From NCBI RefSeq assembly GCF_003918875.1, contig NW_025765004.1, positions 62,001 through 126,000 of the forward strand: DNA of 64,000 bases, given 5' to 3'. The position numbers and the translations under genes were made by a program. This DNA is from Haliotis rubra (taxonomy: Eukaryota). Positions within the stretch are counted from its first letter, which is position 1; every line of letters starts with the position of its first letter. The notes below the pieces were generated by a model. It saw only the letters and a program-made list of their open reading frames with translations. It did not search any database and was not told where the DNA came from. Shown here piece after piece: positions 15,266 to 59,687 of the stretch.

Positions 15266-16438
15266 CTGGTGTATCTGGCTGGTAAGTAGCATAAGAGACC
15301 GGCTGATCGAGACACTGGGGGCCCGTCCATCCGATCTCGCACCTTCTGCAGGTGCCCGAAGTCTGGTCACAGTCAAGACATCTGTACGGACACGCCATCT
15401 CGCATTTCTTGCCGTGGAATCCAGTCATACAACCATTTTCACACTGTCCTGCCATGTTACATGTAGTGTTCACGCAGTTCGCCGAACACTCAGACTGGCA
15501 GTCGGGGCCGTAAAGCCCTGCTTTGCACATGAGGCACGATGCTGAGGAGAACTGATGGCATTTCATGCAGTCAGCGCCACACCTCTCACTGCAGGCCTTC
15601 ACCTGTCCAACCATCCTTGCAGCCATCAATGCACCGGCCAGACTTGTGTTTATTCAGACAGTTATGTTTATCACATTTACGTCCATGCCACCCTTCCATA
15701 CAATCAGATATGCAGACACCGTCCTCCTGGTAACAAGCCTTCTTCTTACATCCTTGACCGCACGTTTCGTTACACGTGGACCCCCACCATCCTTCAGCAC
15801 ATCCTTCCAGACACTTGCCGCTGGTCCGGTGACAGTTCCTCACGTTGTCGTAGCTTAGACGGCAGGTAGTGGGGCAGAGTGTGTCACAACCCTCGGTGTA
15901 TCGTCCAGGAAGACACTGATGACACCGCCCTGTCTGTTTATGGCAGCCCCCCAACCAGCAGCTGACACAGGCGTGTTCACACTGGTACCCCCAGTACCCA
16001 TACAAACACTCCTCGCATGTGCCACTTTTACACAAAGTACACCTTGATTCACTGCAGACCTTCGCACTGGTTCCACCTGGAAGTATCAGATGAAAGAACA
16101 TCTTCAACTAAATGTATAAACATTTAAACCGCACAGACTCAATTCAGTTGCTAAACAACTCTAATCTTTGAGAATCGACTTAAGGACCTACGACTGAACA
16201 TTCCGAAAGGGTATTTGGTTAGAGATACGAACGGAGACGAAGGAGTATGTTTTCCGGACATCCAGCACAATCAGCCGACAAATTATTTGTTTGTAAAACT
16301 CGAGGATACACATTTTTTTATGTAAACAACGTTCCTGAAAGTAGTTGGATCAGCTTTCAAAGCTAAGGTACACTTACAGCAGACGAGCTGAATCACCAAC
16401 ACAGTGAAGAGTGTACTCTGAAATGATAAATGTGTCAT
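15266..16438 (-). CDS. Multiple-EGF-like-domain protein A (MEGF10/SREC-like): signal exon 16438-16378, ectodomain exon 16076-15266; one frameshift; TM and tail exons not located
   Basis: MTHLSFQSTLFTVLVIQLVC|gtaagt, then ttccag|CGTSAKVC... with repeated CxxGxxGxxC motifs. An extra base near 15594 separates the two track ORFs (GWTGEG/CSERC). Phase-1 donor after PDTP. Confidence 0.8.
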
Positions 16439-17469
16439 AAAAGGAATCAGTGTTTCCATTGATTCAGGTGATGCATAAGACAAGAAAAATAAAACAGACT
16501 ATATATTTCAAGTAATAACACGTGCGAGGCCAAGACAGGTAAACAAACCAATGAAATAGGTTACCTTGACATTATTAAACAATAACAGTTTTATTTATCG
16601 TACTTGAACCTGACCTAACAAACATGTCAACCTTGCACTCGACCAATCAGGGAGTAACACTACAATTACAGTGGGTCACACACATACCGCGTCACAACAA
16701 CTGTCGTGTTGACAGACGACACAACTCGAAGTGTTAACTATTAAGCGCAGTACGGGTAGCAGTTGTTGGCCGCTGTGATATCTCTACAGACATGTACCTT
16801 ACACATCTAGTAATGTGCAGGTATTCCGGTTTTCACAGATCTTGTTTGAGTTGGTTCTGCATAAAACAAAGGACATGACGTTATCATAGAATCTGTAATT
16901 AAATAAACAGGTCTCCAGAGATACATGCTCCATCACTTATATGCTTACTCTTACTGCAAATCATATATCATATGCAAGAAACAAGAACAAATTGTGTGAA
17001 GTTTTACTGTCCACGATAAACAGATCCATTTTCTCAACTCACAGATACCCAGCGTGCCACAAGCTGCTGGCGAAGTCTTCCTCCGGTGACTATATTTCCG
17101 GGGTTGAGAGTAGTAGCTCAACTAAGAGAACGTGGGTATGCTTTCACGCCAAATTCAGCAACATTCTAGGTATATCACGGCGAGGTACCCCAGAAATGAG
17201 CTTTACACAGTGCGACCATGTAGGAATCAAACCTGGCTCTTAAGAGACCAGGATTATTCCATCGCCCACTGAAACAAGACAACATCATCATTAAACATTG
17301 CAGTCTTACATTAAACAATAACAACATCAACAGTAAACATTGTGCAAATACATACAAGCACAACAAATATTACTAGTTAACAGAAATGTACGTCATTTTA
17401 GATCTACACATATTACCTTCAATATTCTACTAGATAATGCCAGTAGTCAGTCAGTAGTGACACCTCCAG

Positions 17470-17950
17470 ATTACCCAACCTGCCCCGACGCGCAGTGAGG
17501 GCAAAATATTGACATATATCTGCAGTCGTTGTTTAAAACTAGCTGACATCAGATAAGCTCCGCTCATACATGACTTTTAGTACACTTAAGCCTAATGAGC
17601 GTTACAAGGTTCTACATACGTATATGTTTAGATTCGTGTTATGTGTTGCTGAATATGTGATGGTGTTGTACTGTAACAGTGAGTGTAGAAACCTGGAACC
17701 AGAGGCCTTCATTGCATATTGTCAACACAACATATTCACACGCGATAGCAAGGGTAATACGTGTCATGAAATCATTCCCATGCAGAAAGAGATTAACACA
17801 AACCAAATTATTGAAATTGTCGTGATAATGAAGAGTTATGTTCAAGCAAACAAGTTTATGGACATATGCTGTGTGCATTGCTTCACGTCTAACATTCGGG
17901 TAACCTACAAGTTATGTGCCCTTGGCATGTACCGGGAAGTAATCGACAAC
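17470..17950 (-). pseudogene. Possible highly decayed EGF-repeat exon
   Basis: Minus-strand Cys-rich fragments across frames (GTCQGHITCRLPEC*, SICP*TCLL, ICNEGLW, FCPHCASG), with stops. Confidence 0.3.
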
Positions 17951-18299
17951 TCGTCAGTGTATATGATAATGTTCACAATAATATGATGATAATAATATGA
18001 TGAAAGCAAGGAATTCCACAGCTGTTTCAAGCGTGCCAAGGTTGTTGGACAGATTCTGAAATTTGAGGTTGATTTTGTTGACCTCCTGACAGACGCCCGG
18101 GGGTAGCGAGGTGCTGATAGTGAATTTTGTTTTGCGGCCATCTATCTAATCCTTCTAAGTTTCCGCAAGGCTAGCTGTTGATCATCATTTCGTTACACAA
18201 GTCTATCTTCATAGTAAATTGTCTGTTACAGTCTGTATCTCGGTGGTATTTCTGGTATTTCTGCGAATGAACTTTCACATGTGTCGAGAAATATTTCAA

Positions 18300-18480
18300 T
18301 AGTAACACCCTTTGATTTCTATTTCACAACTTTACAGGTACAATCGAGCATGCTATTTCTAAGAAGAATCCAATAAGCGCCATACGACTCATGCTGAAAG
18401 GTTTACTCAATGAAGGTTACAATAGTCAAGGCCTCGGTAAAGCTTTCAAACGTCTTATGGAACACATGTGCGGGACGTTT
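18300..18480 (+). mobile_element. Possible decayed Penelope-like retroelement fragment
   Basis: ISQLYRYNRAC...LLNEGY...LGKAFKR resembles the post-RT region of Penelope-like elements (ISQLIRYARAC...LL.QGY). Confidence 0.4.
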
Positions 18481-19159
18481 GCCAGTTTGATGCCTAAGTA
18501 ACCAAACAATTGACTTGCCTTTTCATATGTTAGAGACGGTTTCACGAGAAGCAATATATATGCTTACCTCTTGTAGCATGGCAGCTTAAAAGTGATTCAT
18601 AATGTATTTGACCAAGTATTTCGTCAAAATCATGGGATGGGATTTGTTTTCATCACTTATTGTGGAAATGGTCATTTTATTATCAGAATCTGTTTTTCGT
18701 GCTCTTATGATACAAACACAAAATTATTTCAAACGTTTTGTGGAAGAATGTGGCGGCTATTTGCAGATTTCATGCCTCAGTAACCAAAATATTCCTTAAT
18801 GCAATTCACTATTTTGACCATATGTTTTTGTCTTTTCCAGTGAACGGCTTGCCTTTGCACGTGTTAGTGGATATGAAGATTTAGTGGCTCTCAATATGGA
18901 GTTGAAGTATATGAACATCTTTATACAAGGACAAGACCATAACCAAGTCTCAGTATTGAGACATATAAAACCACGTGCAGTCCATCCGGCGATTACATCA
19001 TTTATTTATATCCAATGACTATTTACAAAGACAACTCTACAGCAATACGAGCCGTCAATAAATGCTATAAACTGGGGCAAAATACCACAGAAAACATTCA
19101 GCTAAAGCCACGCAACAATTCAAAGTAATAGAGATGAATGCAAGAAAAATGTACAATTT

Positions 19160-19296
19160 NNNNNNNNNNNNNNNNNNNNNNNNNNNNNNNNNNNNNNNNN
19201 NNNNNNNNNNNNNNNNNNNNNNNNNNNNNNNNNNNNNNNNNNNNNNNNNNNNNNNNNNNNNNNNNNNNNNNNNNNNNNNNNNNNNNNNNNNNNNNN
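19160..19296. other. Assembly gap (N run)
   Basis: Run of n, followed by a ~96-bp-spaced duplicated stretch (19297 and ~19393). Confidence 1.
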
Positions 19297-19478
19297 ATTA
19301 CGCATTTGCATCACGTTATGTATGTGTGTGTAAGAATGGACGAGTTGCTCTCCGTTCCTGAATTTTCGATTTGAATGACCCAGTTGACTGTTTTACGCAT
19401 TTGTATCACGTTATGTATGTGTGTGCAATAAGAATGGACGAGTTGCCTCCCGTTCTTGCACCATGCAAGCGAACTCTG

Positions 19479-19765
19479 GGTGAGTGAGTGAGTGAGTGAG
19501 TGGAGTGAGTGAGTGAGTGAGTGAGTGAGCGAGCTTTACATCGGATTCAGCAATATTCCAGCTATATGGCGGCGGTCTGTAAATAATCGAGTCTGGACCA
19601 GACAGACATCCCAGTGATCAACAGCATGAGCATCGATCTACGCAATTGGGATACAAGGACATGTGTCAACCAAGTCAGCGAGTCTGACTACCTGATCCCA
19701 TTAGTCGCCTCTTACGACAAGCATGGGTTACTGAAGATCCATTCTAACCCGGATCTTCACGGGTC
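19479..19765 (-). mobile_element. SINE with Nin/Deu-like central domain and (ACTC)n tail
   Basis: Reverse complement contains CTTGTCGTAAGAGGCGACTAA and ends GCTGGAATATTGCT plus ACTC repeats. Similar copies at ~24150-24330, 24508-24715, 30930-31050, 33865-34095, 55978-56100, 60930-61176. Confidence 0.8.
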
Positions 19766-20324
19766 CTATATGAACATACAAGAATCACTATGTGTCAGGA
19801 CCGCACACAGTGACAGAAGTGGCGGCGTTGGTGCCCCCGCGGGCCACGTAGCCTAACCAATAACTGAGGGTAAGACCATCTTCGTTTTTTAATTTACAGA
19901 ATGTTAATGTCAGGACTAGCTTCTTATAAGTCATGGCAATTTTGGCATTATAGACGTGTATATGTCATGGCTATTGGGATATTTTTATTATTTAAATAAT
20001 TAACCTTGGGAATTAAATGTTCGTTCAGACAAGGTTTGTTCTAATCATGTCGCCATGACAGTCTCTTATACCCTACTGTCAGTATGTATCCTCCAGAAGG
20101 TACACATATATGCACCAGGCTAGGCTTTCCAATACAACTTTCTCAACTTTGAAGACGTTTCAAGGTTTGGGAAATATCTTTCATACAAAGTAGAATTACA
20201 CATGCAAATTTTGAATTATACAAAACAATTTGAATTTATCTGACCATAATAAAATTATTAATGTAATCGAGTTATTCCTATAAACGATTGAATGCTTGAC
20301 GTTTAAGGCCAGCTATATATGTCG

Positions 20325-23300
20325 CTAAAAGTCAGTGTAATCAAGACATGGATCACTGGCTACAGGAGACAGGTATCCACGCGGGGTTGTTGAATTACAT
20401 GCAGCTCTACTTTCATACGCCACATTATCCACCAGGCAACAAGCTTCTTCCATAAGAGTTCGGTCTTCTCCTTGATTCCCACGTCGCGCCTGAAATCCAG
20501 TATGATCCGTCCATGAGCTCTCCGACTCGTTCCACTTCCAGTCAAATATTGGCAAGGAGTTAGCCCTCTGTAGGGATGTTTTGAACATATGCAAATGTCC
20601 AGTCTTGTGCTCTCTTGACCGTGCGGTGTGACACATAGCAACTGGGGAAGGTGGAGGTTGACCGCGTATTCTGCACGTGTTGTTGCTGCTGCTTGCAACG
20701 ACCCCATCACTTTCATCCATGTCATCTTCGTTGATGTCGTCATAAGCATTTGCAGACATCGGTACGTCTGGCAGTTGTCTACCTTGGGGACTTAGCAAGC
20801 GCCTGTTGGTCCTGATGGACGATGACGTACATGATCTGGAATTATACAGAAACATCACATGAGTTCTGACCAGGAAGAAACAAATAGTATCATAAAAAAA
20901 CAGGATATTTGATGTTTCATAATGTACAGATATCGGCACAAAAACAGTCCAATTTGAGGTACCTTCTAATGAGGAAAGCTACTGTTCCAGAAACCAGCAG
21001 CAACACCACAGATCCTATGACGTAGTTCACAGACGGTGTCATCTGGACGTCCCCGTCCTTTGTATCCAGCGTCGGTTCTAAAAACAGAAATAGGATTCCT
21101 TATACGTATTGTTTAATTCGTCAGGCAAAATTATTCCAAGTAGAACATATCGTCCTGTAAATAATCGAATCTGGTCCAGGCAAACCAGTGACTGATCTTA
21201 TAAGCTAGGATCAGTACCACCTGGGTAAGACGCTTTACCAGCCAAGTCACACTGCCTGAGTGAGTGAGTGAGTTCATATTTAACATCACATCGGCAATAT
21301 CTCAGCCATATCGTGACGAAAACAATTTATACAATAAATAATGAAAATATTTTTAAGAGTAAAACCTGTCTATAATGGACAGTAAAACACTAGAGTATCA
21401 CAGATATGAACATAAAACTAGCATATGAAACTAAAACATTTTAATTAAAGAAGACAATACAATATAAAACACGGGATATAGATCGCCAACAACTGAAGGG
21501 AGATCACCATACTAGGAACCATGGGGACTTACATTACTTTTGCTTTGCTACCCTAGCTGCATGGATCCCTTAGCTGGACTTAATAGTTTGGTAGTGCTAA
21601 ATTGACCTTGAAGTTTTGGGACGTACGTACCCTCTCATGAGTATCATACACTCGATTCCCAATCACAATCCACTCCAACAAAAATAATAGGTGTTAATGG
21701 AATCACCGAAGAATCTTTCACCTGATCATTTTACAGAACTTATCTCAGGTTGAGGATTTTTTTACACACACACATCGTTAGAATTAGTCTTACTTCTTAA
21801 AAACGTAAACAAATATATTTGATGTACAGAGTGTACAGTATGGGGTACAGTATACCAACGTGCCTCCTGTACAAAATAATACAAATTCGATATTCAAATG
21901 ATTGATTGAGTTCATATTTACGCCGCTTTCTTAACAATATTCCAGCTATATCACGTCGGGGGACACCAGAAATGGGCTTCACACATTGTACCCATGTGGG
22001 GAATCGAACCCGGATCTTTGGCGTGACGAGCGAACGCTTTAACCACTAGGCTACCCACCGCCCGATATTCAACTGTGATGTGGAGAAATGAGTATAGTTT
22101 ACAAGATATAAGCTTAGTCCAGTGAGCTAACATTACACATGAACGGAAATTGTCAGACAAGTTTACTTGCTTGCTTTGGTACGAGTTACTGGGGACAGAT
22201 AGCTGTTCTACAAGCTTCGTGGCGTTTGTAAACTTGTGCTAACCATACATTTGTTATAGATATATTTTCCACTGTAGTAATATAACGCTATGAACGCATG
22301 GTGGATCGGGCCACTTCCCTGTTTCACACAGCAGTTGTAACGCTACGTACCCAGTACTTTCCCAGAGGGTTGAATCGCTGACTTTGTGTGATGACGATAA
22401 GGTGCCTGACTACGAGAGTGTGGATTCGAATCCCGGATGGGACCAAACCCGCCCCGCCCAAAAGTACAAAAAGTACTAGAATCTGTACTTCACTGAGAAA
22501 GTGTAATCCCAAATATACTTTATGGTACGTGCAAACACTGCTGTAACATTAAAGGTAATGTACAAACCTAATCACCTACACAATAGGAAATGGCATTATT
22601 AAGTTTAAACACTAACCTGGTTGTATTTCATCTGCGAGGCATAGTCCGTTCTCCCGGTTACAGACAGAGCAATCCCCTACACACGACCTGTTGCAGAGAA
22701 AGCCGTAGTGTCCATCGTTGCAGCCGTTGATACAGTAACCTGTTTTCAGATCACATACACGTTGACGACATCCGTCACTGCACTGCTCATCACAGTCTTG
22801 TCCATAGTAGCCCGATGTACAGCCAGCTAGACACCTGCCTTGGGCATCACACAGTGCTCCTTTACAGTTAGTGGTACATCGGAATTCACATCTTGCTCCA
22901 AAGTGGCCTTTTTCACACCCATGCAGACAGACACCAGAGGAACGATTACAAGCACGAAAGGCACAGTTCTCGTTGCAGCCAAACTGGCATTTCGGCCCAA
23001 AGTTTCCATTAGCGCAGGCAACTGATTGATGATCATCTCTGCAAGTACCATCCATATGGCATCCTTCAGTGGGACATGTTTCTCTGCAGTTGGAACCACA
23101 AGATGATCCGTAAAGAAACGCTCTACATTTTGTGCATGTATTATCTAAACACTGTAGACAATCAACAGGGCATTCGAAACTGCAAGTACTTCCCCAGTAT
23201 CCTGAGATACAGCCATCAGTACAGTTTCCTGTACCGAATCCAGAGTCGGAGCATCTGTTGCTGACGCATCCTCTGCTACATCTGTACCCACAGCTCCGGC

Positions 23301-23432
23301 CATAATACCCATCTTTGCACCCCTGGGAGCATATATCCTTGACACAAAAGTCAATGCAAACAAACGTTAATCATAAACCTTTGCATCGAGATCGTTGGCA
23401 GTGTGTGTGTGGGGCTTAGGTGTTGTGTGAGT
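20325..23432 (-). CDS. Multiple-EGF single-pass receptor C: ectodomain exon ~23432-22617, TM exon 21077-20963, cytoplasmic exon 20835-20325; 5' end degenerate or uncertain
   Basis: The EGF frame is open from ~23370 (CVKDICSQGCKDGYYGRSC...) to EIQP G|gt. The TM exon reads EPTLDTKDGDVQMTPSVNYVIGSVVLLLVSGTVAFLIRR, and the tail contains YDDI, NVAY, YLSPV, DYTDF*. Intron phases 1 and 2 are compatible. A stop near 23373 and the lack of a clear signal exon suggest possible pseudogenisation. Confidence 0.82.
21258..21640 (-). repeat. Unclassified interspersed repeat with SINE-like ACTC tail (relatives start at ~44907 and ~50040)
   Basis: Shared blocks CACATCGGCAA..TCAGCCATATCGTGA, CAACTGAAGG.AGATCACCAT and TACGTACCCTCTCA. 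Confidence 0.6.
21899..22063 (-). mobile_element. tRNA-derived SINE
   Basis: Near-identical to the reverse complement of 37176-37346; A box TAGCCTAGTGG, B box GGTTCGATTCC. Confidence 0.9.
22330..22515 (+). repeat. tRNA-like-containing interspersed repeat (relative of 27033-27445)
   Basis: GGATTCGAATCCCG B box followed by AAAAAGTACTAGAATCTGTACTT...AGAAAGTGTAATCCCAAATATA, the reverse complement of ~27083-27135. Confidence 0.7.
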
Positions 23433-24749
23433 CTGAAAAACATGCAGGACTTCATAATTTACTAGATTTTGCAACTTTACAAAACATGATATTTATTGTA
23501 CATCTTATTAAACGTATTCTACATTGTCAGCACGTATACAGACCTGTTAACAGACGTTCATGGACTGTCGACAAGAGTACTCATACTTACATGCATCTTC
23601 TAGTTTGTTCAACAGAAATGTATTTGTCTGACTCATTACGGAAAAAAGGTTGACACGATTTCGCTCGCTGATTCCTGTAAACAAGGATCTGCAACTATCG
23701 TGGTGTGTCTAAATGAATTCAGAGAGAATGTATTAATTGTGCAGCCTGCTTTGTAACTTTGACAGTCTGCTAGGATTTTTTAGGCCTTACATATTAATAT
23801 TTGTATGCTAATTGATAGAAATTTAATACAAAGCCACTATTGCATGAGGTAATTATACATTACACATTTCAATCACGTTCTAAACATAAACCGTCAAGCG
23901 ATAAGAACAGCTTCGACACACTTGTGACTAGTCAAAACGTGTGCTTATTTTGTTTAATTTAAACCAATAAACCAAACTCATTCACTCACTATAGCCCATG
24001 AACATTATTGATGTTTTAAATTATCATAACTTATAAATGACACTGAAGGAATCCACACACACAGTTCGTTTAGGGGAAATCGAAACGAATGTCTTAAGAT
24101 CCGTCATGTATATGGGTAAATAGAATGAATCCATCATCACATAAAATATTTGTTGTTTGTTGTTTAAAGCCGCACTTGGCAATACTACACCCGAGCTGAT
24201 GACAGTCGGTAAATAACAGCCCAGAACAAACAATGGCGTGATTCATATCATGAGCATCGATCCACGAAACATGGATACGATGACATCCCACGGACCTGGT
24301 CACAAATTGTTGTCTGATAGATGCCTCTAGTTACGGCAGCCCTTTGTTGCTGAAGACCAGTTATAAACCGTATCTTCAAATGCCATCTTCCATGTTCCAG
24401 GACAGTAGAGTTGAGTCCAGCAGTGCCAACAGCAGTACAGTTCGTCAGATGTTTCATTCACTTGTCGTATTTTGTGTGTTTGTCTGTAGTTTAACAATCA
24501 GCAATACTGATTGATTGGTTAACGCCGCAATATTCCAGCTATATGACGATGGTTTGTGAATAACCGACCCTGGACCAGACAATCCAGTGAAGCACATCAT
24601 GAGCATCAATGTGTGCAACTGGGAACCGATGACATGTGTCAACCCAGTCAGCCAGCCCGTTAGTCGCCTCTTACGACAAGCAAGGGTTACTGAAGATTCT
24701 AACCTGAATCTTGGCAGGTTTAATCGCATGTAGATTATCGTTATTACTG

Positions 24750-25402
24750 TCCATGATCTCACTTTGTGGGCCATCTTGACCGGTTGCAGCCACCGATACA
24801 GACGCCGGATACCCAGACACGTGTGCCTGGCGTGCGGACCCTTGTTCACTGTGTCATACCGCATACTGTACAAGTCGTTTCTACAACCCGAAATACAGTC
24901 CATGTCTTCCAGATAAACGGTAAATTTTCACCTGTATCACACATGACTGCATTCCGCTTGCTCTCTCCCCACAAACTTTCTTTACACCTCTCCAAACACC
25001 TGCCTTCTGAAAACCTTCAATCTGTGACTCTTGTCGTCGCTTGATCATTGCTGTCACAGCATTCTACATACATTGCTCTGGGCTACACTGAACATATCCA
25101 CCCGTGTGTTTGTGGCACAAGGTACACAGGCGGAACTCTAGTACACATTAGCACTCTCTACAATGGCTTCTGAAGCAGTCTGAACATTTAATGTTTATTT
25201 CATTCTTTGTCGATATTCCACTCCTTGCACAAATAGTAATTACGATAAGCCCAATACGGCATGCCACATACTTCAGCATGGGGTTTATATGAACGAGTTA
25301 TTAGGATTGGGAATAAGAAAATAAGATCAAAGAAATAAATGAGGTTTACCTGTAAGGATAATTATGACAGCAACCACAAACTAACAATACTGAATAACGA
25401 CA
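24750..25402 (-). pseudogene. Decayed multi-EGF gene B (frameshifted signal exon ~25402-25350 and broken EGF exon)
   Basis: MSLFSIVSL/VVAVIIILT|gtaaac, then fragments SEGRCLERCKESLWG, DCISGCRNDLY and GVCIGGCN, with stops and frameshifts. Confidence 0.55.
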
Positions 25403-27032
25403 TTAATATTAAATTTTCATTTAAAAGTTAAGCCCTTGTGCAAAACAGAAAGCAATGCAAACCAGACGCATGAACACTTACCAGGTTGGAGTGTTTGTAT
25501 ACATGCATGTATATGCTGGTTTCGATCATAACTGAACAATTAATTTAAATGGATTAGAATAATTAAGCGATACCATTACTATCGTTGTTTTCTACACAGT
25601 TGTAGCACACACACTAATTGAAAGTCAAAGAAAGATGACGTGTTGGATCGGATTCAGTTCAAATCGACATTATAGGACACTATTGATGAGCACGGACTTT
25701 GCACTGATTAAGTGTCACGCACCCAAATAATTCATTTTCTTGCAATGGTCTGCTTACATATTCTGTCGGACAACATGAATATTTTGAGTATTTGAAAGGC
25801 AAGGGTAAACACTGCTGTGAATTATGAAGAAAGAAGTGACTGACGAACATAAATGTCAGGGTTGACTTTTGACGTCACTGTATTCATATACATCCCAGTT
25901 TGCAATGCCAAATACACGTAGTCATGACAGAAATAGAAGTCCAACAGAAGCTTTCATGTAAAAAAATAATTAAAATTCAGGCTTTCGAGTTGTACGGTAC
26001 GCCAAAATTCAACATGGACACATACTAATATTCATACGAACGTGCAGTCGGTGCATGTTAATATTTTGCCGTTCCAAGAACAGAGACTTCATATATGAAA
26101 CAGAATGATGAGGAACCGGCTTAGGGCTGTGACCAATGGCTGTTATGTACTGTTCATGAAATTGTATGAAGTAAGATAAAATGATCTTATCAGATGCAGA
26201 ATAATTTCATTTAACGTTCTACATCATCAATTCCAAAACTCAAGCACCTTATATAGTTGTATACTGAGCAGGAGGTGCAACCTGGTTGTCTGCAACGCGA
26301 ACACTGAGTCGTGATGAGAGAAATATTTCCTGTTGCTTGCAGTCGACACACTCTCGAAGGTCGTAGTGATACTTCCAATGTCAACCCTAAGATAAGAGCA
26401 ACAGCAAAAACGTGATTTACAGCACTACACGCCAGCTCAAGAGAGAGGAAAGCCTGCAGTGTTGCAGGCCTTAAACGTTTACAACTGAACATCCATGAGT
26501 CTGGTACTGACAAACCTAACACGCAATCAACGAATACTGAATTCAATCCCTTTCCATGTGGAGCTCTGCTCCTGGCCGTTCGTGTCTTCTGCATGTCCAT
26601 GTTGATATCGTAAACCTCCACTGATTGTAATAGTGATGAATTGCCCATCGATCTATAAGGACATGAAACCTTTTGTTTTCGCAGACAATTTTATACATTT
26701 GTTTCTCATATGAAACAAATGCATTGACCACTAAAACGATCTGATAAAGGAAACGTATTGTTTCAGTATTTGAAGCCGTTTATGTTTGACATCGGTAGAT
26801 TAGACATGCAACAGTTACTGCTTTAATTTTCTCTACTTTTTCCTTTACTTTTTCTACAAGTTATTAGGACATGAACATACTTGCGTTCGTGGTGTTTCGG
26901 ATATTATCTTAAGATAATAAAAGAATAAAATACCTACTACACACTATTTTGAACATATACTTATGTACGTTCATACTTTGGGTTCTATTGACATATTCAT
27001 ATATTCCAGTCAACATGTCGGATATCCGTAGA

Positions 27033-27445
27033 TGATTACACAATGCCATTTGGAAAGTGGTCAGTTGTAACATACATGTATGTTATATTTGGGATTACAC
27101 TTTCTTAGTAAAGTACAGATTCTAGTACTTTTTGAGCTGAGTCCCATTCGGGATTCGAACCCACATCCTCAGAGTCAGGCACCTAATTGCCAGCACACAA
27201 AGTCAGCCGCCTATCCCGCTCAGCCACCGCGACTTCCACAAAAATGGAAGTGGGACAACTGGTAGTCTAGACTGCGGACTTTGTGTACCCTTCTGATAAG
27301 TGTTAATTGGCACGGCTCCCACGACCGAAAGCTATGATTACACAATGCCATTTAGAAAGTGGTCAAATGTAACATATGTTATATTTGGGATTACACTTTC
27401 TTAGAAATCTTTACTAAGAAAGTGTAATCCCAAATATAACATATC
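27033..27445 (-). repeat. tRNA-like-containing element bracketed by ~70-bp direct repeats and a terminal inverted copy
   Basis: GATTACACAATGCCATTT.GAAAGTGGTCA...TTATATTTGGGATTACACTTTCTTAG occurs at ~27033 and ~27336. An inverted copy CTAAGAAAGTGTAATCCCAAATATAACATA starts at 27415. Minus-strand A box GTGGCTGAGCGG and B box GGTTCGAATCC lie between the direct repeats. Confidence 0.7.
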
Positions 27446-27699
27446 CTAATACGACCTCATCGTGCCTTGACGTACAACCCAAGTAGGCATAACCTAATTC
27501 ATGAAGTTTATACCTGCTTGGGTGTTCCACTTTGTTTGCATCAGTTCCCTGATGTAGAGTGTTTGAAATCAGTGTAAGGAACTTGAAGTGGATCGACAGA
27601 TTTCTCAAGAGATGCCTTCACTGCTGCATCAGCTTTTCTATTACCAGCCATGCCAACATGACTTGATAACCAACAAAAGACTATGTCGAACAGGCCAGT

Positions 27700-28900
27700 A
27701 GAGAGTTCACTGTAAAGTTCTAAAATAGCGAGTATGAAGTGCCTAAAGACAGGAGAGGGAATCAGGGAAGATGATAAATTGCATATGATTGGATTGATGC
27801 TGAGTGTATTCCAAGGCTATCTGGATAGCCCTGGCTTCCGCAGTGAAAATTGAACTGTTATCAGGAATCCTGGTAGGCAATTTTTTTCATCCAACGACAG
27901 TGGCACTTGAAACAATGTCCCCATCTTTTGATCCATCTTAAAATTAGAACGATAAGTATCATATGCAGTTTGTTACTTTATATATTCCTGTTTATATATT
28001 AGTGGATTAGTGTCAGATTTTTTAGCGAAGGAAGATCTACTCCAGGCCTTACTAGTTGCCAGGGAGGAGATGGAGAGGTTATATCCAAGTCGATTTTGGC
28101 ATTGGTAATATGGGGCTTGATCCAAATTCCAACTGGCGGGACTAGTTTAGGTTTACTTTGAAACAAATCCTCATAATGGGGATGAAACAAACAATTATAG
28201 GCTGGATTGGTTGGCTTTGAGCGTAACTTAGTTACATACTGCAGGGACAATTTTAAACGACGTTGTTTGAGGGAGGGTTCGTCAGCTTCCACGAAAACAC
28301 TTTCCACAGGCGATGTCCTGAACACTCCAAGGTAGCGTCTAAGTCTCGATGATGTATGCTATTTAGGTTTGTTTAATTACTTTTGGAAGCTCCGCCATAG
28401 ACGATCGAACCGTAATGTAGTTTAGATCGAATAAGGGATCTGTACATGTGAAGAAGGGTTGCCTGACCCCGCCCCACTTAGAATTAGCAACAACTTTGAG
28501 TACATCAAGGGCCTTCAAGCACTTTTTAGGTATTTTGTATGAGATTAAAATGTTAAATGATGGTCATAAAATAACACCTAAGAATTTGGTCTCTTCCACA
28601 ACCTTAAAAAGGTGTTGCCATCTAAAAATAATTCTGGATCTTTATGCGATCGATAATGCCTATTAAAAATGTATGCAATTGGTTTTCGTTTTAGAAACAA
28701 AAACATTTCTGGATTTGATTGAGACACGGCTGCAATTGTCTTTCAATTGTGCGCATATCTTTGCACGACAAGATATGTTAAAATCGTCAATAAAAAGTGA
28801 TCCATCAATGGAGTCATTTAATACCTTAGACAGGCTGTTTATTTTGATGCGAAATAACGTTGCAGATAAGATACTACCCTGTGGGACACCGGTTTTGACT
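27700..28900 (-). mobile_element. Degenerate I/Nimb-clade LINE fragment (RT C-terminus to RNase H)
   Basis: GVPQGSILSATLF, SLFIDDFNI, SKTKTNCIHF, KFLGVIYD, FRTSPVESVFVEADEPSLKQRR, then DGSK of an RNase H-like region; many stops. Confidence 0.85.
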
Positions 28901-29714
28901 CTGAGACACCCATGGCACCCGAAGAAAGGACATGTCAAATATGTGGAACTCGCTAAAGAAATTTTACGCCTGCATCGCAAGTACCAAGGTGTCCGACTCC
29001 CCATTGTTCTCGGTGCCTTGGTTTGGTACCTCCTGATTTCTTGGCGCAGACCAGGTAAGTGTCAGGGTTCTTCACCGGGAGCACAGCCCTGACACTCTAT
29101 GGAAAGAGCATCTGGAATGATGGAGAGTCTTCATATTCTCTGAAAAGGTCTTGGTGGGTTTAACTTGAAAGCGCTTAAATGGACCAAGGCTCCTGAACTG
29201 ATGACGAGCCCAACTAGGCTGACTCCCAGGATCACCCGGACACCAACAGCTATATGTATTTATTTCAGTCTGTAAATATTCATAGCAATAATTAATCACT
29301 GTTTGCCTGTACGTATTGATTCACTGGTCAAGATTGAAATAATTTCCTCGAACCAGAGTTCGCTTGTCAGGATATGTGTTTCCTGCTCCACACTTTTAAA
29401 ATGAGTTTCAATTTCCTCCTGCAAAACACATCATACTGATATGTAGCGTTCACGGCTATTCGGAACTACTTACATGCAACATTTTACTTGAGGTAAGTGT
29501 TGTTACTAATAATATATAAAATGTATGTGTAATCGTGGAGGACATTTTCATTTATTCTTTATGAATTTAGCATTTAATGTCATTATGTCTATTTACAAAC
29601 ATATACATTGTATTGTATTGTGTCATGCATTTCGGGTTCACTTTCACAATACCTGAAACACAGACCGTGGTGTAGCCACCATAATCTCTTCAAAATAGAA
29701 ATATGTTTTTCAGG

Positions 29715-32074
29715 ATGATTCTCGCGGCAACGGTTTTCATCATAGCCGCCTTGATTGACATGCCATCGATTGCTTTAAGCAGTAAGTTACTTATTGTGCT
29801 CCACAACCAATGACGTACACATTAGAGCACTGTAATGGGTGTAATGGATGTAACATTTCCTGTAACTTTGTGCCATTTAAAAGCAACTAAAACGTATAAT
29901 TACCTTAAAATTTACATTGAAATCACTTTATGTGACAGAGCTTGTGGTCTGTTTCAGCCCACTGTGTAGAGGGAAGTCACTGCAAGGACGATAAGTGCGG
30001 GGATCTTGGGTGTTTGAATGGATGCGAGGAAGGCTACTTTGGCCCGCACTGTACAAACAACTGCAGTTCTGGATGCAAGGACGGCACATGTGATTCTTCA
30101 GGAAAAGCTTGTATCGGCGACTGCATAGACGGTCGGTGGGGCACAGTTTGTAGGCTGACTTGTTTCAGTTCATGCAAGACATGCGCTAAGGACAATGGTT
30201 CGGACTGTACATCATGTGAAGAATATAGATACGGCCCACAGTGTGGACAATCCTGTTCTTCCAAGTGTCCCAACCGTGGCTGTGATGTTAACGGAAGGTG
30301 TAAAAGCAGATGTGGCGACAGATGTAAGGTTTGCAATGATGTTACACAAGAGTGTGATGGATGCAAGCGTGGTACGTTTGGCCCTGTCTGCCAGTGGAGG
30401 TGTAATGTTAACTGTGCTGATGAGATATGCCATCAAGAAACAGCAAACTGTTCGATTGGATGCAAAGATGAGTATTTTGGACCGAAGTGTGAGTACCGGT
30501 GTAATGAACAGTGTTTCCAGGGTAAATGCGAGCAGGGGACGGGGATGTGTGTACAGGGATGTAGACGAGGATACTACGGACCTCTCTGTATATTGCCTTG
30601 TGATTCATGCCTGTCCGATATTTGCGATAATTCGTCTGGAGAATGCTTGAAAGGCTGCAAGATGGGCTTCTTCGGCAAGGGATGCAAGAACAGATGTGAT
30701 GATAATTGTATCAGCGGATATTGTTCCAGATTCGATGGTGTTTGCTATCAACCCGAAGGTAAATAGACAAATATATTCTGAGGTGACCGTCTCCATGTTC
30801 TCTTTAACGGTGTGATGGTTACCTAAAACCAATTACGTTTAACGATTCAGTCGGTGTGTGTGCATGCTTGCGTTTGTGTTGATGCGTTTGTGTTAAAGCC
30901 TCACTGACCAATATCCAAACTAAATGAAAACGACCTGTACAGAAACCTAGTCTGGACCAGGCTATCAAGTGATTGATATTATGAGTAACGATCCACACCA
31001 TGCCATCAGCACTGTGACCGAGCCTGATCATCCGACCCAACACAGGTTGCTAGGTACAAATTCTAACACGGTGTCTGTCATTTTACTTCCAGTTCCTGTA
31101 GCTCCCAACTCCACACCCGGAATGTCCCATGGCAGCAATTACTGGATGTACATTGTCGGGGGTTGTATCGGGATCCTTCTATGTTCTGCAGTGTGTTTCC
31201 TGGTCTTTAGGTATGTTATTTATATTATGTGTCTACAAGCTGTAATACTGACAGCTTAATGTTCAAGACGCGCCACACACTGATTACAGTCACTCAGCTT
31301 CTACTCATTCTGGGGGTAATTTCCATCAATGTGTGGGGTATTTTCTGTCTATTACATGTAGTTACGGTAGAATACATCACTAAATTTTGTCATGTTGAAT
31401 TTTACACTTGCAATGAAACTGAAATCCAAAAGTAATCATCATGGATTTTGTCAGAAATAAACTGCGCATGTAAAAAACTATTTTAAAAGTCCTTTTTGTT
31501 TTGTTTGTCATTTTCCATGTTTTGACTTAAGCTAAATACAGTATCCGTTTCTTACAGGTATGGTGGCCGCATTCGTGGTAGCCATCAACGAAGAGGTAGG
31601 TTCCGACAAAGTACGCCTCTACCGCCTGTACCGCCTGTACCCATCCCGCATGATGACCTGTATGACGAGTTGGATGTTGGACACTCGGACACCGATAGCA
31701 GACCGTCGGGATTGGACGAGGCAGGAAACGCGCATGTTGACTTGCCTGGAGATATGTCCAGTATGAGTGATGATAAACACAACAGCGATTCAGTGAGGGT
31801 CAGTGCTTTCGGAAATGTTTGCCCGAAGTTTCCTGGTCAAGAAACTAAGAGCGAGATGCCTCATGTCCAGATGACATGGTTGACGGAGACAGGCCCTACT
31901 GCTGTAGAGGCCAAGGGTCCTGACAAAGCCGCATCCATTGATGTGACATGCGATAATACATCCACTCACCTTGATGAGGGACTTCACTTCAACCCATCTT
32001 ACACGAGTCTGGGTGGTAGGTCCAGACCTTCGAGAAATTATTTATCTCCAGTCGAGGAATATATTAAAGCGTAA
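29715..32074 (+). CDS. Complete multiple-EGF single-pass receptor D (MEGF10/SREC/Draper-like), 500 aa; exons 29715-29781, 29958-30758, 31093-31210, 31558-32074
   Basis: Signal MILAATVFIIAALIDMPSIALS; Cys-rich EGF repeats in one exon; TM YWMYIVGGCIGILLCSAVCFLVF; tail with PLPPVPPVP, LYDEL, NPSYTSL, NYLSPV. All introns are GT-AG with phases 1,1,2, and the exons sum to 1503 nt without internal stops. Confidence 0.92.
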
Positions 32075-36055: not shown

Positions 36056-36058
<3 letters not shown>

Positions 36059-43900: not shown

Positions 43901-43974
43901 CGTCGGGTATATCATGTAACATTATTGCCGTGCACACCTGTAGGACATATTTCAATCTCGACAACAAATGGCCA

Positions 43975-57114: not shown

Positions 57115-57338
57115 CACAGGGGTTCGCATCACTGTTTGGACAATATTTTTTTTAAATAAAAAATCTATATTTTTGCAACCGTATATTGTTTTTATATGTT
57201 ATGAGTAACTTATGTTTTAAATTTGAACGAAATCGGTGAAGAAATGGATTTTTTAGAAAATTATCCCGCTTCACTCATTACATAAAATAACGTGTATTAT
57301 ATAAAAATATTGTCCAAACAGTGATTCGAACCCCTGTG
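57115..57338. mobile_element. MITE with ~35-bp TIRs and 8-bp TSD (P- or hAT-type)
   Basis: CACAGGGGTTCG.ATCACTGTTTGGACAATATTTT is inverted at the two ends; TTTCAATC at 57107-57114 and 57339-57346. Confidence 0.9.
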
Positions 57339-58283
57339 TTTCAATCCCATCCGTGATTGAGCACGTAGCATAGAGATGCTGAGATCCACATCCAGCTGAT
57401 TGGACTGATGGTCGGGGAACCTGTCAAATACAAATAACAACCAATACATACAACTGATACCAATGATATTATGAATTACGCAAGTCAGATCCATCACCTG
57501 ATAACTGCTTTAAGATATGCTTTACTCTACGTTACTAGAGAACAAATGAGTATTTCAGTTCAATCTGTATTGGGAACCGTAAAAAGTCAGTGTATGAAAC
57601 GGATTGTGAGTCCCTTCATTGTACAAATAAATCACTGTGCATTCTATTGTTTGATCCGTGTATACACATATGATCGATTAAAGAAAACAATGTTTGTCAT
57701 GTCATCAAAGAAATGGCTGATCGGCTTGTTGAGGTGGTGGCCAGAGTTCCATGTCAAGGAGAGTGAGTGAAGGTTGTTTGATGCCGCAGTCAGGTATATA
57801 AGAAAGACTGTCAGTAATCCAGTCAGGGCCAATAAACCCAATCACTGATGTACTAAACACAGTTACAGCCATACCAAGTACCAGGGCCACATTGACAAAC
57901 AACACATGTATATACAACATCACATTTGTATTACTCTGGGCAATCATTTCTCAAAGAAGCAATTTGATATCGATACTGTCAGTGCCATTTGTCGTTTGTT
58001 TACACTTTCTATTTGTTAACGGTAACAGGCAAACACCTGTACATAACTGTTGTTTCCGGGTGGTTGCCCGTGCTTAGATCTACAAGTGCTCCTTTGGCAT
58101 TCCTGTGATACTTATTGACCATAGACAACTATCTGGGGTCTTGATGATATTTGACGTCATCACCTATCATACCATGTATGTATTCTGAGGGTAAATACAG
58201 GGGACAATGTTTATAAAAATTCATGATCTTAATTAATGGAAGTGAACGACGTGTGTGTCTGTGTGTGTGTGTGAGTGACTCAC

Positions 58284-59687
58284 CTTGAGACAACATGACT
58301 GTGGACTTGGTTGGCGAGTCATTTGAGTTCTCGTTTAGAAGGTATCTTCCTTGTCGTTTTGAAGTACATAACCCGGATGTCTGTTCACACCTCAGGCAAG
58401 ATGATGCACATGGCACAGTACAGTTGCCGCCGTAATGACCATCTGGACACTTCTTACAGGTGCCATTTATGTTGCATTCAACTCCCACACATCTGTTGCT
58501 GCATGGAGACTGGCAATCCTCATCCGACCATCCTCTGACACATCCCCTGGTACAAGTAACTGAGGAGAGCAGTTCGTTGTATGTGCATGTATTGTCCACG
58601 CAATTCCTACACCGTATGTCACACTTCGGCCCAATGAACCCTGGCTTGCATTGACCACAGTATCCCTGGACAAGGTTGCATCTGTTCCACAGACAGTTTT
58701 CTGGACATGGTTTATCACACAACTGGCCGCCGAACCATCCATCAGTGCAGCCAAGAAGACATGTTCCCACATCCTGGTGACATGCAGATTGATCACAGTT
58801 GCCGGGGCAGGGTTTCTGACACTGATGCCCCCACCGACCAGGGACACACCCCTCCAGACACCTCCCTGCGTCACGGTCACAGTACCGGTTGCCATCAACA
58901 CTCGCACAGCAATTAAGTGAACATCTTTTAAAACATCCATCAGAGTAGTATCCAGGCGAGCACTGTACACATCTCCCTGTGTCCTGTTCACATCTACCAT
59001 ACCAGCATCCTTGACACTTCTTGGAGCAGTCAGCACCAAACCATCCAAATATACACTCTCTGCAAGTACCATGCTTACAGTCGAGGCAGTGGTCTCCACA
59101 TTGGCCATGTGCTGACTCCACTACAAATACGACATAAAGTAGTAGGTGAGTGAGTGAGTGAGTGAGTGAGGTCGACATGTTCAACACCTGATACAGCAAT
59201 TTAACGTGGTTTACACCAAGAAGTGCTTCAGAAAGTCCAACCATAAGGGAATCTTACAATTAACCTTTTCAATGACATAAACATTGAAATATTTGTTTAC
59301 TGATTTCAGAAAACATTTACATTATTGATTTTAGGACAACTGACGATGAATGAAAAGATCGTTCTACATTTGTCTCAAAATATAAATAAAATATATACTT
59401 TTCGTTAAACTGTGTTCTGTCAAAAGTAAAGCTACGACATAAGTTTCTGAATTTGTTATCACTTTTTACAGAAATAAAACTCACTTATGCGAAATAATAC
59501 ACCACGATCGTTTAAATTGCGCCGGACACTTTCAAATATGAACAATCCTAATTCTATCTACAGAATACGTTACAGGGTTAGAGGGGAAATGGGATTTGAG
59601 GATGTTCTAAGATCACATTCGTAAAATAATATACCAGGTTTACTTACAGGCAAAAGCCACGTACATCACAAATATGATCTTCACCAT
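58284..59687 (-). CDS. Multiple-EGF protein F: signal exon 59687-59648, ectodomain exon 59120-58284; TM exon uncertain (hydrophobic candidate ~57840-57930)
   Basis: MVKIIFVMYVAFA T|gtaagt joined to ttgtag|LESAHGQCGDHC; open Cys-rich frame to STVMLSQ G|gtgagt. Paralogue of E with a single copy of the 71-aa module. Confidence 0.88.

What the first reader, a model, noticed from the sequence alone, without database searches (positions are those of the whole stretch)
15266..59687. Birth-and-death cluster of compact multi-EGF receptors with single-exon ectodomains
Seen: at least five genes (A, C, D, E, F) and one or two remnants in ~45 kb. They share a small signal exon (degenerate in C) and one 0.8-1.4-kb phase-1/phase-1 ectodomain exon; C and D also show a TM exon and a tail exon. 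Most are strongly diverged from each other, and D is inverted relative to the rest. Established: MEGF10/Draper/CED-1/SREC are engulfment or scavenger receptors, normally with ectodomains spread over many exons. Inference: a lineage-specific, rapidly turning-over recognition receptor family (immune, phagocytic or allorecognition), whose symmetric single exon can be duplicated or swapped as a cassette.
Basis: partly seen in the sequence, partly recalled or inferred. Interest (0 to 1): 0.7.

Follow-up and report, generated by a model that had tools for sequence, protein, structure and literature searches.

The report
Abalone SCARF-like multi-EGF gene cluster
This stretch of blacklip abalone DNA holds five neighbouring genes for EGF-repeat surface proteins of the scavenger-receptor (SCARF/MEGF-like) kind, an old cluster conserved among abalones and already machine-annotated, so it is a real but fairly ordinary family expansion, not a fast-evolving new receptor system.

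Summary
The window is Haliotis rubra scaffold C114:62001-126000. It carries five multi-EGF loci (A, C, D, E, F). Each has one large phase-1/phase-1 ectodomain exon of 801-1430 nt. D is inverted, and C and D have a TM exon and a tail exon. No extra remnants were found.

- A, E and F end in a short hydrophobic exon that looks like a GPI signal.
- A and E each carry one 1-nt frameshift, which may be an assembly error.
- C is a pseudogene: its signal exon is deleted and it has two in-frame stops.
- The A-C-D block occurs three times on the scaffold, and a different gene is broken in each copy.
- The cluster runs from about 4 to 147 kb of C114, with 12 EGF exons.

H. asinina has A-C-D-E-F-G in the same order, orientation and spacing. 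Ortholog dN/dS is 0.14-0.43 in the ectodomains. This points to old, constrained neighbours rather than rapid turnover. There is no whole-exon cassette swapping, but E and F homogenise the 3' two thirds of their exon by gene conversion. E is transcribed and spliced. The fold and profile are closest to human SCARF1. RefSeq already names these genes SCARF/MEGF10/PEAR1-like.

The scan reached the same verdict on two other pieces of this genome. Both N gaps lie outside coding exons.

The parts
14626..16806 (-). Gene A, a SCARF-like gene of the short-anchor class. Coding exons: 16798-16806, 16378-16417, 15266-16076 (ectodomain, 811 nt) and 14626-14726 (hydrophobic C-terminus). One extra base at 15596/15597 shifts the frame and gives a stop at 15586-15588. 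The N gap at 14845-14993 lies in the last intron.
   Evidence: RefSeq P0169 (179 aa, truncated at the frameshift) maps exactly. The paralog A'' is 97.5% identical and lacks the extra base. The last exon is identical to that of P0168.
20325..23432 (-). Gene C, of the TM+tail class, a pseudogene in this copy. Ectodomain exon 22617-23432 has two in-frame stops in its first ~21 codons and a small insertion. TM exon 20963-21077, tail exon 20325-20835. The signal exon is absent.
   Evidence: The H. asinina ortholog P0067 (501 aa) aligns to all three exons. The stops were read. The signal exon is found in blocks I and II but not here, where about 600 bp are missing.
29715..32074 (+). Gene D, of the TM+tail class, intact. 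Signal exon 29715-29782 (an alternative ATG lies at 29703), ectodomain exon 29958-30758 (801 nt, about 8 six-Cys EGF-like modules), TM exon 31093-31207, tail exon 31558-32074 with Tyr motifs YDEL, (NPS)YTSL and YLSPV.
   Evidence: The H. asinina ortholog P0017 (487 aa) aligns exon by exon at 90% in the ectodomain and 65% in the tail. Splice sites and split codons were read. The AF2 model has pLDDT 91.
38420..42645 (-). Gene E, of the short-anchor class. Exons: signal 42606-42645, mini-exon 42309-42332, ectodomain 39044-40473 (1430 nt), last exon 38420-38493 (hydrophobic C-terminus). It is transcribed and spliced.
   Evidence: RefSeq P0009 maps here. Run X7 shows three GT-AG joints at 42332|42606, 40473|42309 and 38491|39042, with coverage confined to the exons.
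39435..40243 (-). Tandem array inside E's ectodomain exon: 213 bp x 3.8 copies at 96% identity, each unit 71 aa or two EGF-like modules. At the unit junction 39860-39862 the A-run is A3, while the next unit has A4 at the same place. This shifts the frame.
   Evidence: TRF. Junctions compared. Overlapping open frames seen. RefSeq P0009 reads on out of frame for about 200 aa. Logan contigs break in the repeat, so the frameshift could not be verified.
57341..59687 (-). Gene F, of the short-anchor class, intact. Signal exon 59648-59687, ectodomain exon 58284-59120 (837 nt), last exon 57341-57420 (hydrophobic C-terminus).
   Evidence: RefSeq P0001 (318 aa, 'scavenger receptor class F member 1-like') maps exactly to the three exons. 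Splice sites were read.
39088..39651 (-). Part of E's ectodomain exon that is 90% identical to F at 58364-58930. This is a tract of gene conversion between E and F.
   Evidence: Self-blastn. Over this part the tree groups E with F within each species (bootstrap 88 and 99). The 5' ~190 nt group by gene.
2697..33022 (.). Copy III of a ~25-30 kb segmental block (A-C-D). The block also occurs at C114:1-26.7 kb (inverted, 93-97% identity) and at C114:34.7-58.6 kb (direct, 80-95%).
   Evidence: Self-blastn of C114:1-176000. The state of the genes in each block was checked.
19160..19296 (.). Assembly gap, intergenic between C's 3' end and A's 5' end.
   Evidence: Gene models as above. The flanks are collinear in both paralogous blocks. 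The letters were not looked up.

Best explanation
The finding is the central part of a ~145-kb tandem cluster of SCARF-like multi-EGF surface-protein genes in the blacklip abalone, Haliotis rubra.

Each gene encodes a signal peptide and a rod of about 8-14 compact six-cysteine EGF-like modules. The modules are all carried on one symmetric phase-1/1 exon.

Two anchoring classes sit side by side:
- C and D are type-I membrane proteins. They have a TM exon and a ~170-aa cytoplasmic tail with three conserved tyrosine motifs.
- A, E and F (and G and H outside the window) end in a ~25-33-aa exon. It has small residues, a short spacer and then 11-15 hydrophobic residues. This is most likely a GPI-attachment signal, so these proteins would have no signalling tail.

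The array A-C-D-E-F-G predates the split between H. rubra and H. asinina and evolves under purifying selection. In the H. rubra assembly the A-C-D block was triplicated and the copies decay in a complementary way. In the window, C is dead, D and F are intact, and A and E each carry one unverified 1-nt frameshift. E and F keep distinct N-terminal modules, while gene conversion homogenises the membrane-proximal two thirds of their ectodomain.

Inferred, not shown: the ectodomains bind polyvalent or polyanionic ligands or cell surfaces, as SCARF1, MEGF10 and the Nimrod proteins do. C and D would transmit uptake or adhesion signals through the Tyr motifs. The lipid-anchored members would act as tail-less binders.
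For: Species and existing annotation. RefSeq H. rubra proteins map exactly to the window.

Gene structures.

Transcription. RNA-type contigs of run X7 carry all three E introns as GT-AG joints, with coverage confined to the exons.

EGF and SCARF likeness.
- A family profile matches human SCARF1 best among all PDB chains (8hna, E 1.5e-16), then Tie2, Delta and Jagged.
- The AF2 model of D's exon has pLDDT 91.2, and its best Foldseek match is 8hna (E 1.2e-7, prob 1.00).
- The cysteine spacing is a regular 3-3-4-6-3-8.

Cluster extent and blocks.

Synteny. H. asinina has the same gene order and orientation.

Selection. Ortholog dN/dS is 0.14-0.43 in the ectodomains and 0.5-0.66 in the tails.

Gene conversion between E and F.

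Tail motifs. They are conserved between the C-type and D-type genes and in the homolog P0030, a protein of unidentified source from the representative search.
Against: - No functional or tissue data were obtained. The only RNA evidence is for E, it consists of assembled contigs, and it comes from a run whose RNA nature is a guess by the tool.
- GPI anchoring is inferred from sequence features alone. No predictor was available. A's tail is only weakly hydrophobic and is followed by 9 polar residues.
- Pfam does not recognise the window exons above threshold. The only hits are EGF_TEN at E 0.002-0.009, below its cut-off.
- The assembly is a Nanopore/Illumina hybrid meta-assembly of two individuals with haplotigs purged. 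The two frameshifts, and possibly part of the block triplication, could therefore be artefacts. Contig C933 looks like an unpurged haplotig of blocks I+II.
Confidence: 0.8

Rival explanations
1. This is a lineage-specific, rapidly turning-over recognition receptor family (immune, phagocytic or allorecognition) that diversifies by duplicating or swapping the symmetric ectodomain exon as a cassette.
For: - The family is large.
- H. rubra has a triplicated block with pseudogenes.
- E holds a recent intragenic module duplication.
- E and F exchange sequence.
- The exons are phase 1/1.
Against: - H. asinina has one-to-one orthologs in the same order and orientation.
- dN/dS is 0.14-0.43.
- The exchange between E and F homogenises them rather than diversifying them.
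- No exon was found transplanted between genes.
- A, E and F have no signalling tail.
Confidence: 0.12
2. The proteins are not immune receptors. They would be adhesion, matrix or developmental surface proteins, for example in epithelial or mantle adhesion, the shell matrix or neural wiring. That is the role of many EGF-repeat proteins in molluscs.
For: - Synteny is conserved and selection is purifying.
- EGF-domain proteins are tandemly duplicated shell-matrix genes in Pinctada and Lottia (PMC4759782).
- The structural neighbours include Tie2, Delta/Jagged and laminin LE modules.
Against: - The best sequence and fold match is SCARF1, a scavenger receptor.
- The C and D tails carry Yxx(L/I) motifs typical of endocytic or phagocytic receptors.
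- There are no ZP, collagen or other matrix domains.
Confidence: 0.3
3. The signs of decay in the window (the frameshifts in A and E) and part of the block triplication are assembly artefacts. In that case A and E are intact genes.
For: - Both frameshifts are single-base length differences in short runs. A has GG against G. E has A3 against A4 at a junction of 96%-identical repeats.
- The reading frames downstream stay open to the proper donors, and the last exons are intact.
- E is spliced and present in RNA-type contigs.
- The assembly is Nanopore-based and merged from two individuals.
- C933 mirrors blocks I+II.
Against: - No indel was reported at either site by the Illumina-derived contigs, but coverage across 39860 could not be shown.
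- C's lesions are a 600-bp deletion, two stops and an insertion. These are not of the artefact type.
- Blocks II and III differ by 5-20%, which is too much for alleles.
Confidence: 0.5

Closest known systems
Vertebrate scavenger receptor class F (SCARF1/SREC-I, SCARF2)
   Same: - The architecture matches: signal peptide, an array of EGF-like modules, a single TM and a cytoplasmic tail (C and D).
- SCARF1 is the best profile match (8hna, E 1.5e-16) and the best fold match.
- RefSeq names several members 'scavenger receptor class F member 1/2-like'.
   Different: - The tail is ~170 aa with Tyr motifs and shows no detectable similarity to the long Ser/Pro-rich SCARF tails (my own knowledge of SCARF tails).
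- The whole ectodomain lies on one exon.
- Half of the cluster (A, E, F, G, H) has no TM or tail at all, only a GPI-like C-terminus.
- Orthology to SCARF1/2 is not shown.
MEGF10 / Draper / CED-1 engulfment receptors
   Same: - Multi-EGF type-I receptors with tyrosine motifs in the tail.
- D has NPSY and YTSL.
- RefSeq names the H. asinina orthologs of D and C 'MEGF10' and 'MEGF6'.
   Different: - There is no N-terminal EMI domain. The ectodomain begins directly with EGF-like modules.
- NPxY is not conserved in the H. asinina ortholog, which has SPCY.
- The two YxxL/I motifs lie ~110 residues apart, so they do not form an ITAM.
- The modules are compact six-Cys units, not the CxC-containing units of MEGF10 (the comparison is from my own knowledge).
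Drosophila Nimrod gene cluster (NimA, NimB1-5, NimC1-4; Eater)
   Same: - A conserved chromosomal cluster of EGF-repeat genes (PMC6852320).
- From my own knowledge rather than the passages read, it mixes transmembrane receptors (NimC) with tail-less secreted members (NimB).
- Repeat number varies by tandem duplication and homogenisation. This is my own knowledge for Eater/NimC and is shown here for E.
   Different: - The repeats here do not have the NIM-repeat cysteine pattern.
- The tail-less members here carry a GPI-like signal rather than being plainly secreted.
- There is no evidence of common descent of the clusters, and no functional data.

Membership tests
EGF-like repeat proteins, SCARF/Tie type | Tandem modules of ~33-43 aa with six conserved cysteines and a G-x2-G-x2-C end | tested here: met
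   Cysteine spacing is a regular 3-3-4-6-3-8 in all five exons. Cys and Gly columns are invariant across 40 homologs.
EGF-like repeat proteins, SCARF/Tie type | Significant sequence match to curated EGF models or to solved EGF arrays | tested here: met
   Single exons give only sub-threshold Pfam EGF_TEN hits and no PDB hit by single sequence. The family profile matches SCARF1 at 1.5e-16, Tie2 at 5e-10 and Delta/Jagged. Nine of 40 homologs match EGF_TEN and five match EGF_laminin.
EGF-like repeat proteins, SCARF/Tie type | EGF-array fold | tested here: met
   AF2 pLDDT is 91.2. Foldseek's best match is SCARF1 8hna at E 1.2e-7, followed by DLL4, Tie2, CELSR1 and laminin LE. TM-scores are low (0.15-0.31), as expected for flexible rods.
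Scavenger receptor class F (SCARF1/2) as a gene family | Type-I topology: signal, EGF array, one TM, cytoplasmic tail | tested here: inconclusive
   Met by C and D. Not met by A, E and F, which lack a TM helix and tail.
Scavenger receptor class F (SCARF1/2) as a gene family | Orthology, or a tail homologous to SCARF tails | not tested
   No phylogeny with vertebrate SCARFs was made. The tails hit no Pfam family (protein 8).
Scavenger receptor class F (SCARF1/2) as a gene family | Binding of modified LDL or other polyanionic ligands | not testable with these tools
   Needs recombinant protein.
MEGF10/Draper/CED-1 | N-terminal EMI domain before the EGF array | tested here: not met
   There is no EMI hit in Pfam for any exon. 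Mature N-termini start within a few residues of the first EGF-like cysteine.
MEGF10/Draper/CED-1 | Conserved NPxY and YxxL motifs in the tail | tested here: inconclusive
   D has NPSY and YTSL, but its ortholog has SPCY. YxxL/I motifs are conserved. C lacks NPxY.
GPI-anchored proteins (A, E, F) | C-terminal signal: a small omega and omega+2 residue, a 6-10-aa spacer, and a hydrophobic stretch at or near the C-terminus with no cytoplasmic tail | tested here: inconclusive
   Read by eye.
- E: S-H-G, an 8-aa spacer, then 15 hydrophobic residues to the end.
- F: S-Q-G, a 6-aa spacer, 14 hydrophobic residues, then 5 polar ones.
- A: N-G-C, a 7-aa spacer, 11 weakly hydrophobic residues, then 9 polar ones.
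No GPI predictor or experiment was available.
Nimrod family | NIM repeat consensus (CxPxCxxxCxNGxCxxPxxCxCxxGY) | tested here: not met
   The spacing has no CxC pair and no such consensus. The consensus itself is from my own knowledge.

The most novel reading that the evidence does not exclude
The conserved side-by-side arrangement of tail-bearing members (C, D) and lipid-anchored members (A, E, F, G, H) is a functional unit, a molluscan counterpart of the insect Nimrod cluster. The GPI-linked proteins would present distinct N-terminal 'heads' on a stalk kept uniform by gene conversion. They would hand ligands (microbes, dying cells) to the signalling C and D receptors.
Probability: 0.1. Interest if true: 0.55.

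Novelty: new member of a known kind. Interest (0 to 1): 0.3.

Why it matters
Use for annotation:
- It corrects gene models in the public H. rubra annotation. The E model reads about 200 residues out of frame. The A model is truncated at a possibly artefactual frameshift. C is a pseudogene.
- It shows that 'SCARF/MEGF10/PEAR1/Tie-1-like' names in abalone cover one family with two membrane-anchoring classes.

Biological points:
- An ancient mixed cluster of tail-bearing and probably GPI-anchored multi-EGF proteins is conserved across abalones.
- Gene conversion between E and F is region-restricted, leaving the N-terminal modules free to differ.

These are modest observations that can be tested. 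They do not open a new kind of system.

Tried and rejected
1. Pfam on the single exons gave only sub-threshold EGF_TEN hits. A single-sequence PDB search found nothing. A family profile and a fold search were needed instead.
2. None was found.
3. The word-index protein search with D found no full-length relative, because D's ortholog (487 aa) lies just above the length limit. The exhaustive representative search found it.
4. The look-up of encoding contigs does not serve the window's own genome. The gene models were therefore built from exact mapping of RefSeq proteins and from orthologs.
5. The E frameshift could not be verified. All runs are Logan contigs, which break inside the 213-bp repeat. 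No listed piece bridges 39860.
6. I looked for a D-type gene within 10 kb of E in H. rufescens and found none. The synteny claim therefore rests on H. asinina alone.
7. ITAM reading of the tails: rejected, because the Tyr motifs lie ~110 residues apart.
8. Whole-gene positive selection: rejected by the dN/dS values. Site models were not run.
9. All searches were made exon by exon, by reference.
10. The letters of the two N gaps were not looked up in the paralogous blocks. Only the coordinates of the aligned flanks were used.

Full report
WHAT THE WINDOW IS

The window is G000:C114:62001-126000, part of a 2,223,537-bp scaffold. Three H. rubra RefSeq proteins map to it exactly, residue for residue and exon by exon:
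- P0001, 'scavenger receptor class F member 1-like';
- P0009, 'platelet endothelial aggregation receptor 1-like';

That assembly is a Nanopore/Illumina hybrid meta-assembly of two individuals, polished with Racon and Pilon and then purged of haplotigs (PMC6774278). This history matters for what follows.

THE OBSERVATION

A scan of all six frames finds Cys-rich open frames at five places. A family HMM run over all 2122 ORFs of the window finds only these five. The next hit has E 0.26. The five loci are real, and the 'one or two remnants' are not confirmed.

The large exons are:

| Gene | Coordinates | Strand | Length |
|---|---|---|---|
| A | 15266-16076 | - | 811 nt |
| C | 22617-23432 | - | 816 nt |
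| D | 29958-30758 | + | 801 nt |
| E | 39044-40473 | - | 1430 nt |
| F | 58284-59120 | - | 837 nt |

Each has a phase-1 acceptor and a phase-1 donor.

The signal exons are as follows:
- F: 59648-59687.
- E: 42606-42645, followed by a 24-nt mini-exon at 42309-42332.
- D: 29715-29782.
- A: split into 16798-16806 and 16378-16417.

The TM and tail exons of C (20963-21077 and 20325-20835) and of D (31093-31207 and 31558-32074) are confirmed by two H. asinina proteins that align exon by exon:
- P0067, 501 aa, 'MEGF6';
- P0017, 487 aa, 'MEGF10'.

The TM exon is 115 nt in both genes, running from phase 1 to phase 2.

THE GAPS

The gap at 19160-19296 lies 1 kb past C's stop codon and 2.35 kb before A's start codon. 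No coding exon touches it. In both paralogous blocks of the same scaffold, the sequences that flank the gap lie in the same order and orientation, about 30 bp apart. The flanks are therefore most likely continuous. I used coordinates only and did not read the corresponding letters.

The second gap (14845-14993) lies in A's last intron, between the donor at 15266 and the last exon at 14626-14726.

1. A, E and F are neither orphan ectodomains nor tail-bearing receptors. Each splices to a short last exon: A at 14626-14726, E at 38420-38493 and F at 57341-57420. That exon encodes small residues, a 6-8-residue spacer and then 11-15 hydrophobic residues at or near the C-terminus. The same C-terminus is seen in H. 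asinina, H. rufescens and H. cracherodii relatives. This is the layout of a GPI-attachment signal. It is too short for a stable TM helix and leaves no cytoplasmic tail. I could not run a GPI predictor. I put GPI anchoring at about 60% for E and F and 45% for A.

2. A has one extra base at 15596/15597. It reads GG where the 97.5%-identical paralog A'' has G. This gives a stop five codons later, and RefSeq's model P0169 ends there at 179 aa.

3. E has a 1-nt shortfall at 39860-39862. It reads A3 where the neighbouring repeat unit has A4 at the same junction. The site lies inside a 213-bp x 3.8 tandem array of 96% identity. RefSeq's P0009 reads on out of frame for about 200 residues.
   - In both A and E the proper frame stays open downstream to the canonical donor, and the last exon is intact.
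   - Given the Nanopore origin of the assembly, I rate an artefact at roughly even odds, somewhat higher for E.

4. C is a pseudogene in this copy.
   - The ~600 bp that carry its signal exon in both paralogous blocks are missing.
   - The first ~21 codons of its large exon hold a TAA, a small insertion and a TGA.
   - The rest of the gene is still open, so the loss is recent.

RNA EVIDENCE

All available runs are Logan contigs. I laid four of them on 38400-42700. Run X7 is labelled 'RNA?' by the tool and comes from 'organism B'. It covers only the exons of E, plus a repeat in the intron. It carries three joints with CT..AC ends, which read as GT..AG on the minus strand: 42332|42606, 40473|42309 and 38491|39042. 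These are exactly the predicted introns, and they include the join to the hydrophobic last exon. E, or its near-identical counterpart in that sample, is therefore transcribed and spliced as modelled.

No listed contig bridges 39860, and the contigs break in the repeat. The frameshift remains untested. No tissue information was available.

WHAT KIND OF PROTEINS

Pfam sees the window exons only below threshold (EGF_TEN, E 0.002-0.009). A single-sequence search of PDB finds nothing.

A profile of 40 homologs taken from the exhaustive search (1173 proteins at E<=1e-3) gives these PDB matches:
- human SCARF1 best (8hna, E 1.5e-16);
- Tie2 (5e-10);
- Delta and Jagged.

An AlphaFold2 model of D's exon has mean pLDDT 91.2. 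Foldseek ranks SCARF1 8hna first (E 1.2e-7, probability 1.00), ahead of DLL4, Tie2, CELSR1 and laminin LE modules.

The cysteine spacing is a regular 3-3-4-6-3-8. These are compact six-Cys modules: about 8 in A, C, D and F, and about 14 in E. There is no EMI domain, so the proteins are not MEGF10/Draper/CED-1 in the strict sense. The spacing also does not fit the NIM repeat.

The tails of the C-type and D-type proteins, and of the homolog P0030 (a protein of unidentified source from the representative search), share three tyrosine motifs:
- (D/N)xYDx(L/I) near the membrane;
- Y(T/E)S(L/R);
- RxY(L/I)(S/T)PV near the C-terminus.

D's NPSY is SPCY in its ortholog. The YxxL/I motifs lie ~110 residues apart, so they do not form an ITAM.

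THE CLUSTER AS A WHOLE

I fetched C114:1-176000. It holds 12 EGF exons between 3.9 and 146.7 kb and none from 147 to 176 kb. Two more E/F-type genes, G and H, lie just beyond the window.

Self-comparison shows that window 2.7-33 kb is copy III of an A-C-D block. Copy I lies at C114:1-26.7 kb (inverted, 93-97% identical). Copy II lies at 34.7-58.6 kb (direct, 80-95%).

The copies decay in a complementary way:

| Block | A | C | D |
|---|---|---|---|
| I | intact | intact | broken |
| II | broken | intact | intact |
| III (window) | one frameshift | dead | intact |

Contig C933 mirrors blocks I+II at the same identities to D. It is probably an unpurged haplotig, which speaks for I+II being a real structure. 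Whether there are three blocks per haplotype still needs read depth or a HiFi assembly.

CONSERVATION

On H. asinina chromosome CM074532.1 the called genes are:

| Gene | Protein length | Strand | Position |
|---|---|---|---|
| A | 324 aa | - | 14.254 Mb |
| C | 501 aa | - | 14.260 Mb |
| D | 487 aa | + | 14.267 Mb |
| E | 379 aa | - | 14.278 Mb |
| F | 291 aa | - | 14.292 Mb |
| G | 321 aa | - | 14.311 Mb |

This is the same order, orientation and near-identical spacing as in the window.

Nei-Gojobori estimates between the two species give dS 0.20-0.41. dN/dS is:
- A: 0.29-0.43;
- C: 0.33;
- D: 0.14;
- E: 0.22-0.32;
- F: 0.29;
- the C and D tails: 0.51-0.66.

Recent H. rubra paralogs give dN/dS 0.35-0.54. 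This is purifying selection, relaxed in the tails and in the young duplicates, with no whole-gene signal of diversifying selection. In H. rufescens, F and E are also adjacent and in the same relative order. No D-type exon lies within 10 kb of E there.

GENE CONVERSION

The 3' ~565 nt of the E and F ectodomain exons are 90.4% identical within H. rubra and 91.3% identical within H. asinina. Between orthologs they are only 85.6-86.7% identical. An ML tree groups E with F within each species, with bootstrap 88 and 99.

The 5' ~190 nt do the opposite. Orthologs are 90% identical, while E and F are 63-69% identical.

E and F therefore keep gene-specific N-terminal modules on a membrane-proximal part that is repeatedly homogenised. 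It works inside the exon, and it homogenises rather than shuffles.

VERDICT

The structural observation is confirmed and extended. There is a family expansion, and in H. rubra there is real duplication and decay. The core array, however, is old, syntenic and constrained, and its function is unknown.

The genes are already annotated automatically under SCARF, MEGF10, PEAR1 and Tie-1-like names. I found no paper on this family in abalone in six literature searches. Two other follow-ups of this scan, on other pieces of the same genome, reached the same verdict.

I file it as a new member of a known kind, with interest 0.3.

Joined spliced models were not searched, by rule.

Noticed in passing
window 6512-12022: A 5.5-kb stretch holds a Harbinger-type DDE transposase ORF (7916-8701; DDE_Tnp_4, E 1e-38) and a YqaJ-type exonuclease ORF (9466-10056). 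It is absent from both paralogous blocks, where the flanks abut (C114:23504/23505 and 36156/36157). These are empty sites showing a recent insertion into block III only. This bears on scan notes s1-352123 and s1-352192.
   Followed up: partly
window 39263-39860 (-): RefSeq protein P0009 ('PEAR1-like', 425 aa) translates about 200 residues of gene E out of frame after the 1-nt frameshift and misses the true C-terminal exon. RefSeq P0169 (gene A) is truncated at 179 aa. Both models need checking against reads.
   Followed up: partly
window 41136-41711: An element in E's second intron has a contig word depth of 10^4-10^5 in three DNA runs, against about 100 for its flanks. It is a very high-copy dispersed repeat, possibly SINE/MITE-like.
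   Followed up: no
window 43976-47028 and 49115-52161: Two 3-kb segments are 95.6% identical. Each is headed by a 32-bp satellite array (43979-44702 and 48261-49833; GC rises to 0.51). They lie between E and F, next to a reverse-transcriptase fragment (43380-43967, RVT_1 E 1.5e-6).
   Followed up: no
window 1-1044: A 72-bp tandem repeat, 14.4 copies at 96% identity, is open in one frame (180 aa). It continues leftwards into C114:61722-62000.
   Followed up: no
C114:138838-139581 and 146058-146729 (outside the window): Two further E/F-type genes, G and H, form a young pair (dS 0.12, 90% aa). tblastn reported a TGA in the region of G. RefSeq P0008 ('Tie-1-like isoform X2', 227 aa) looks like H; it shares H's C-terminal residues, but I did not map it.
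   Followed up: partly
contigs C273, C2215, C877, C2643 and C2 of G000: Long tandem arrays of A-like single-exon EGF genes. C273 alone has at least 12 matches at 36-42% identity to the F exon, in open frames of 330-390 aa. The superfamily is far larger than this cluster.
   Followed up: no
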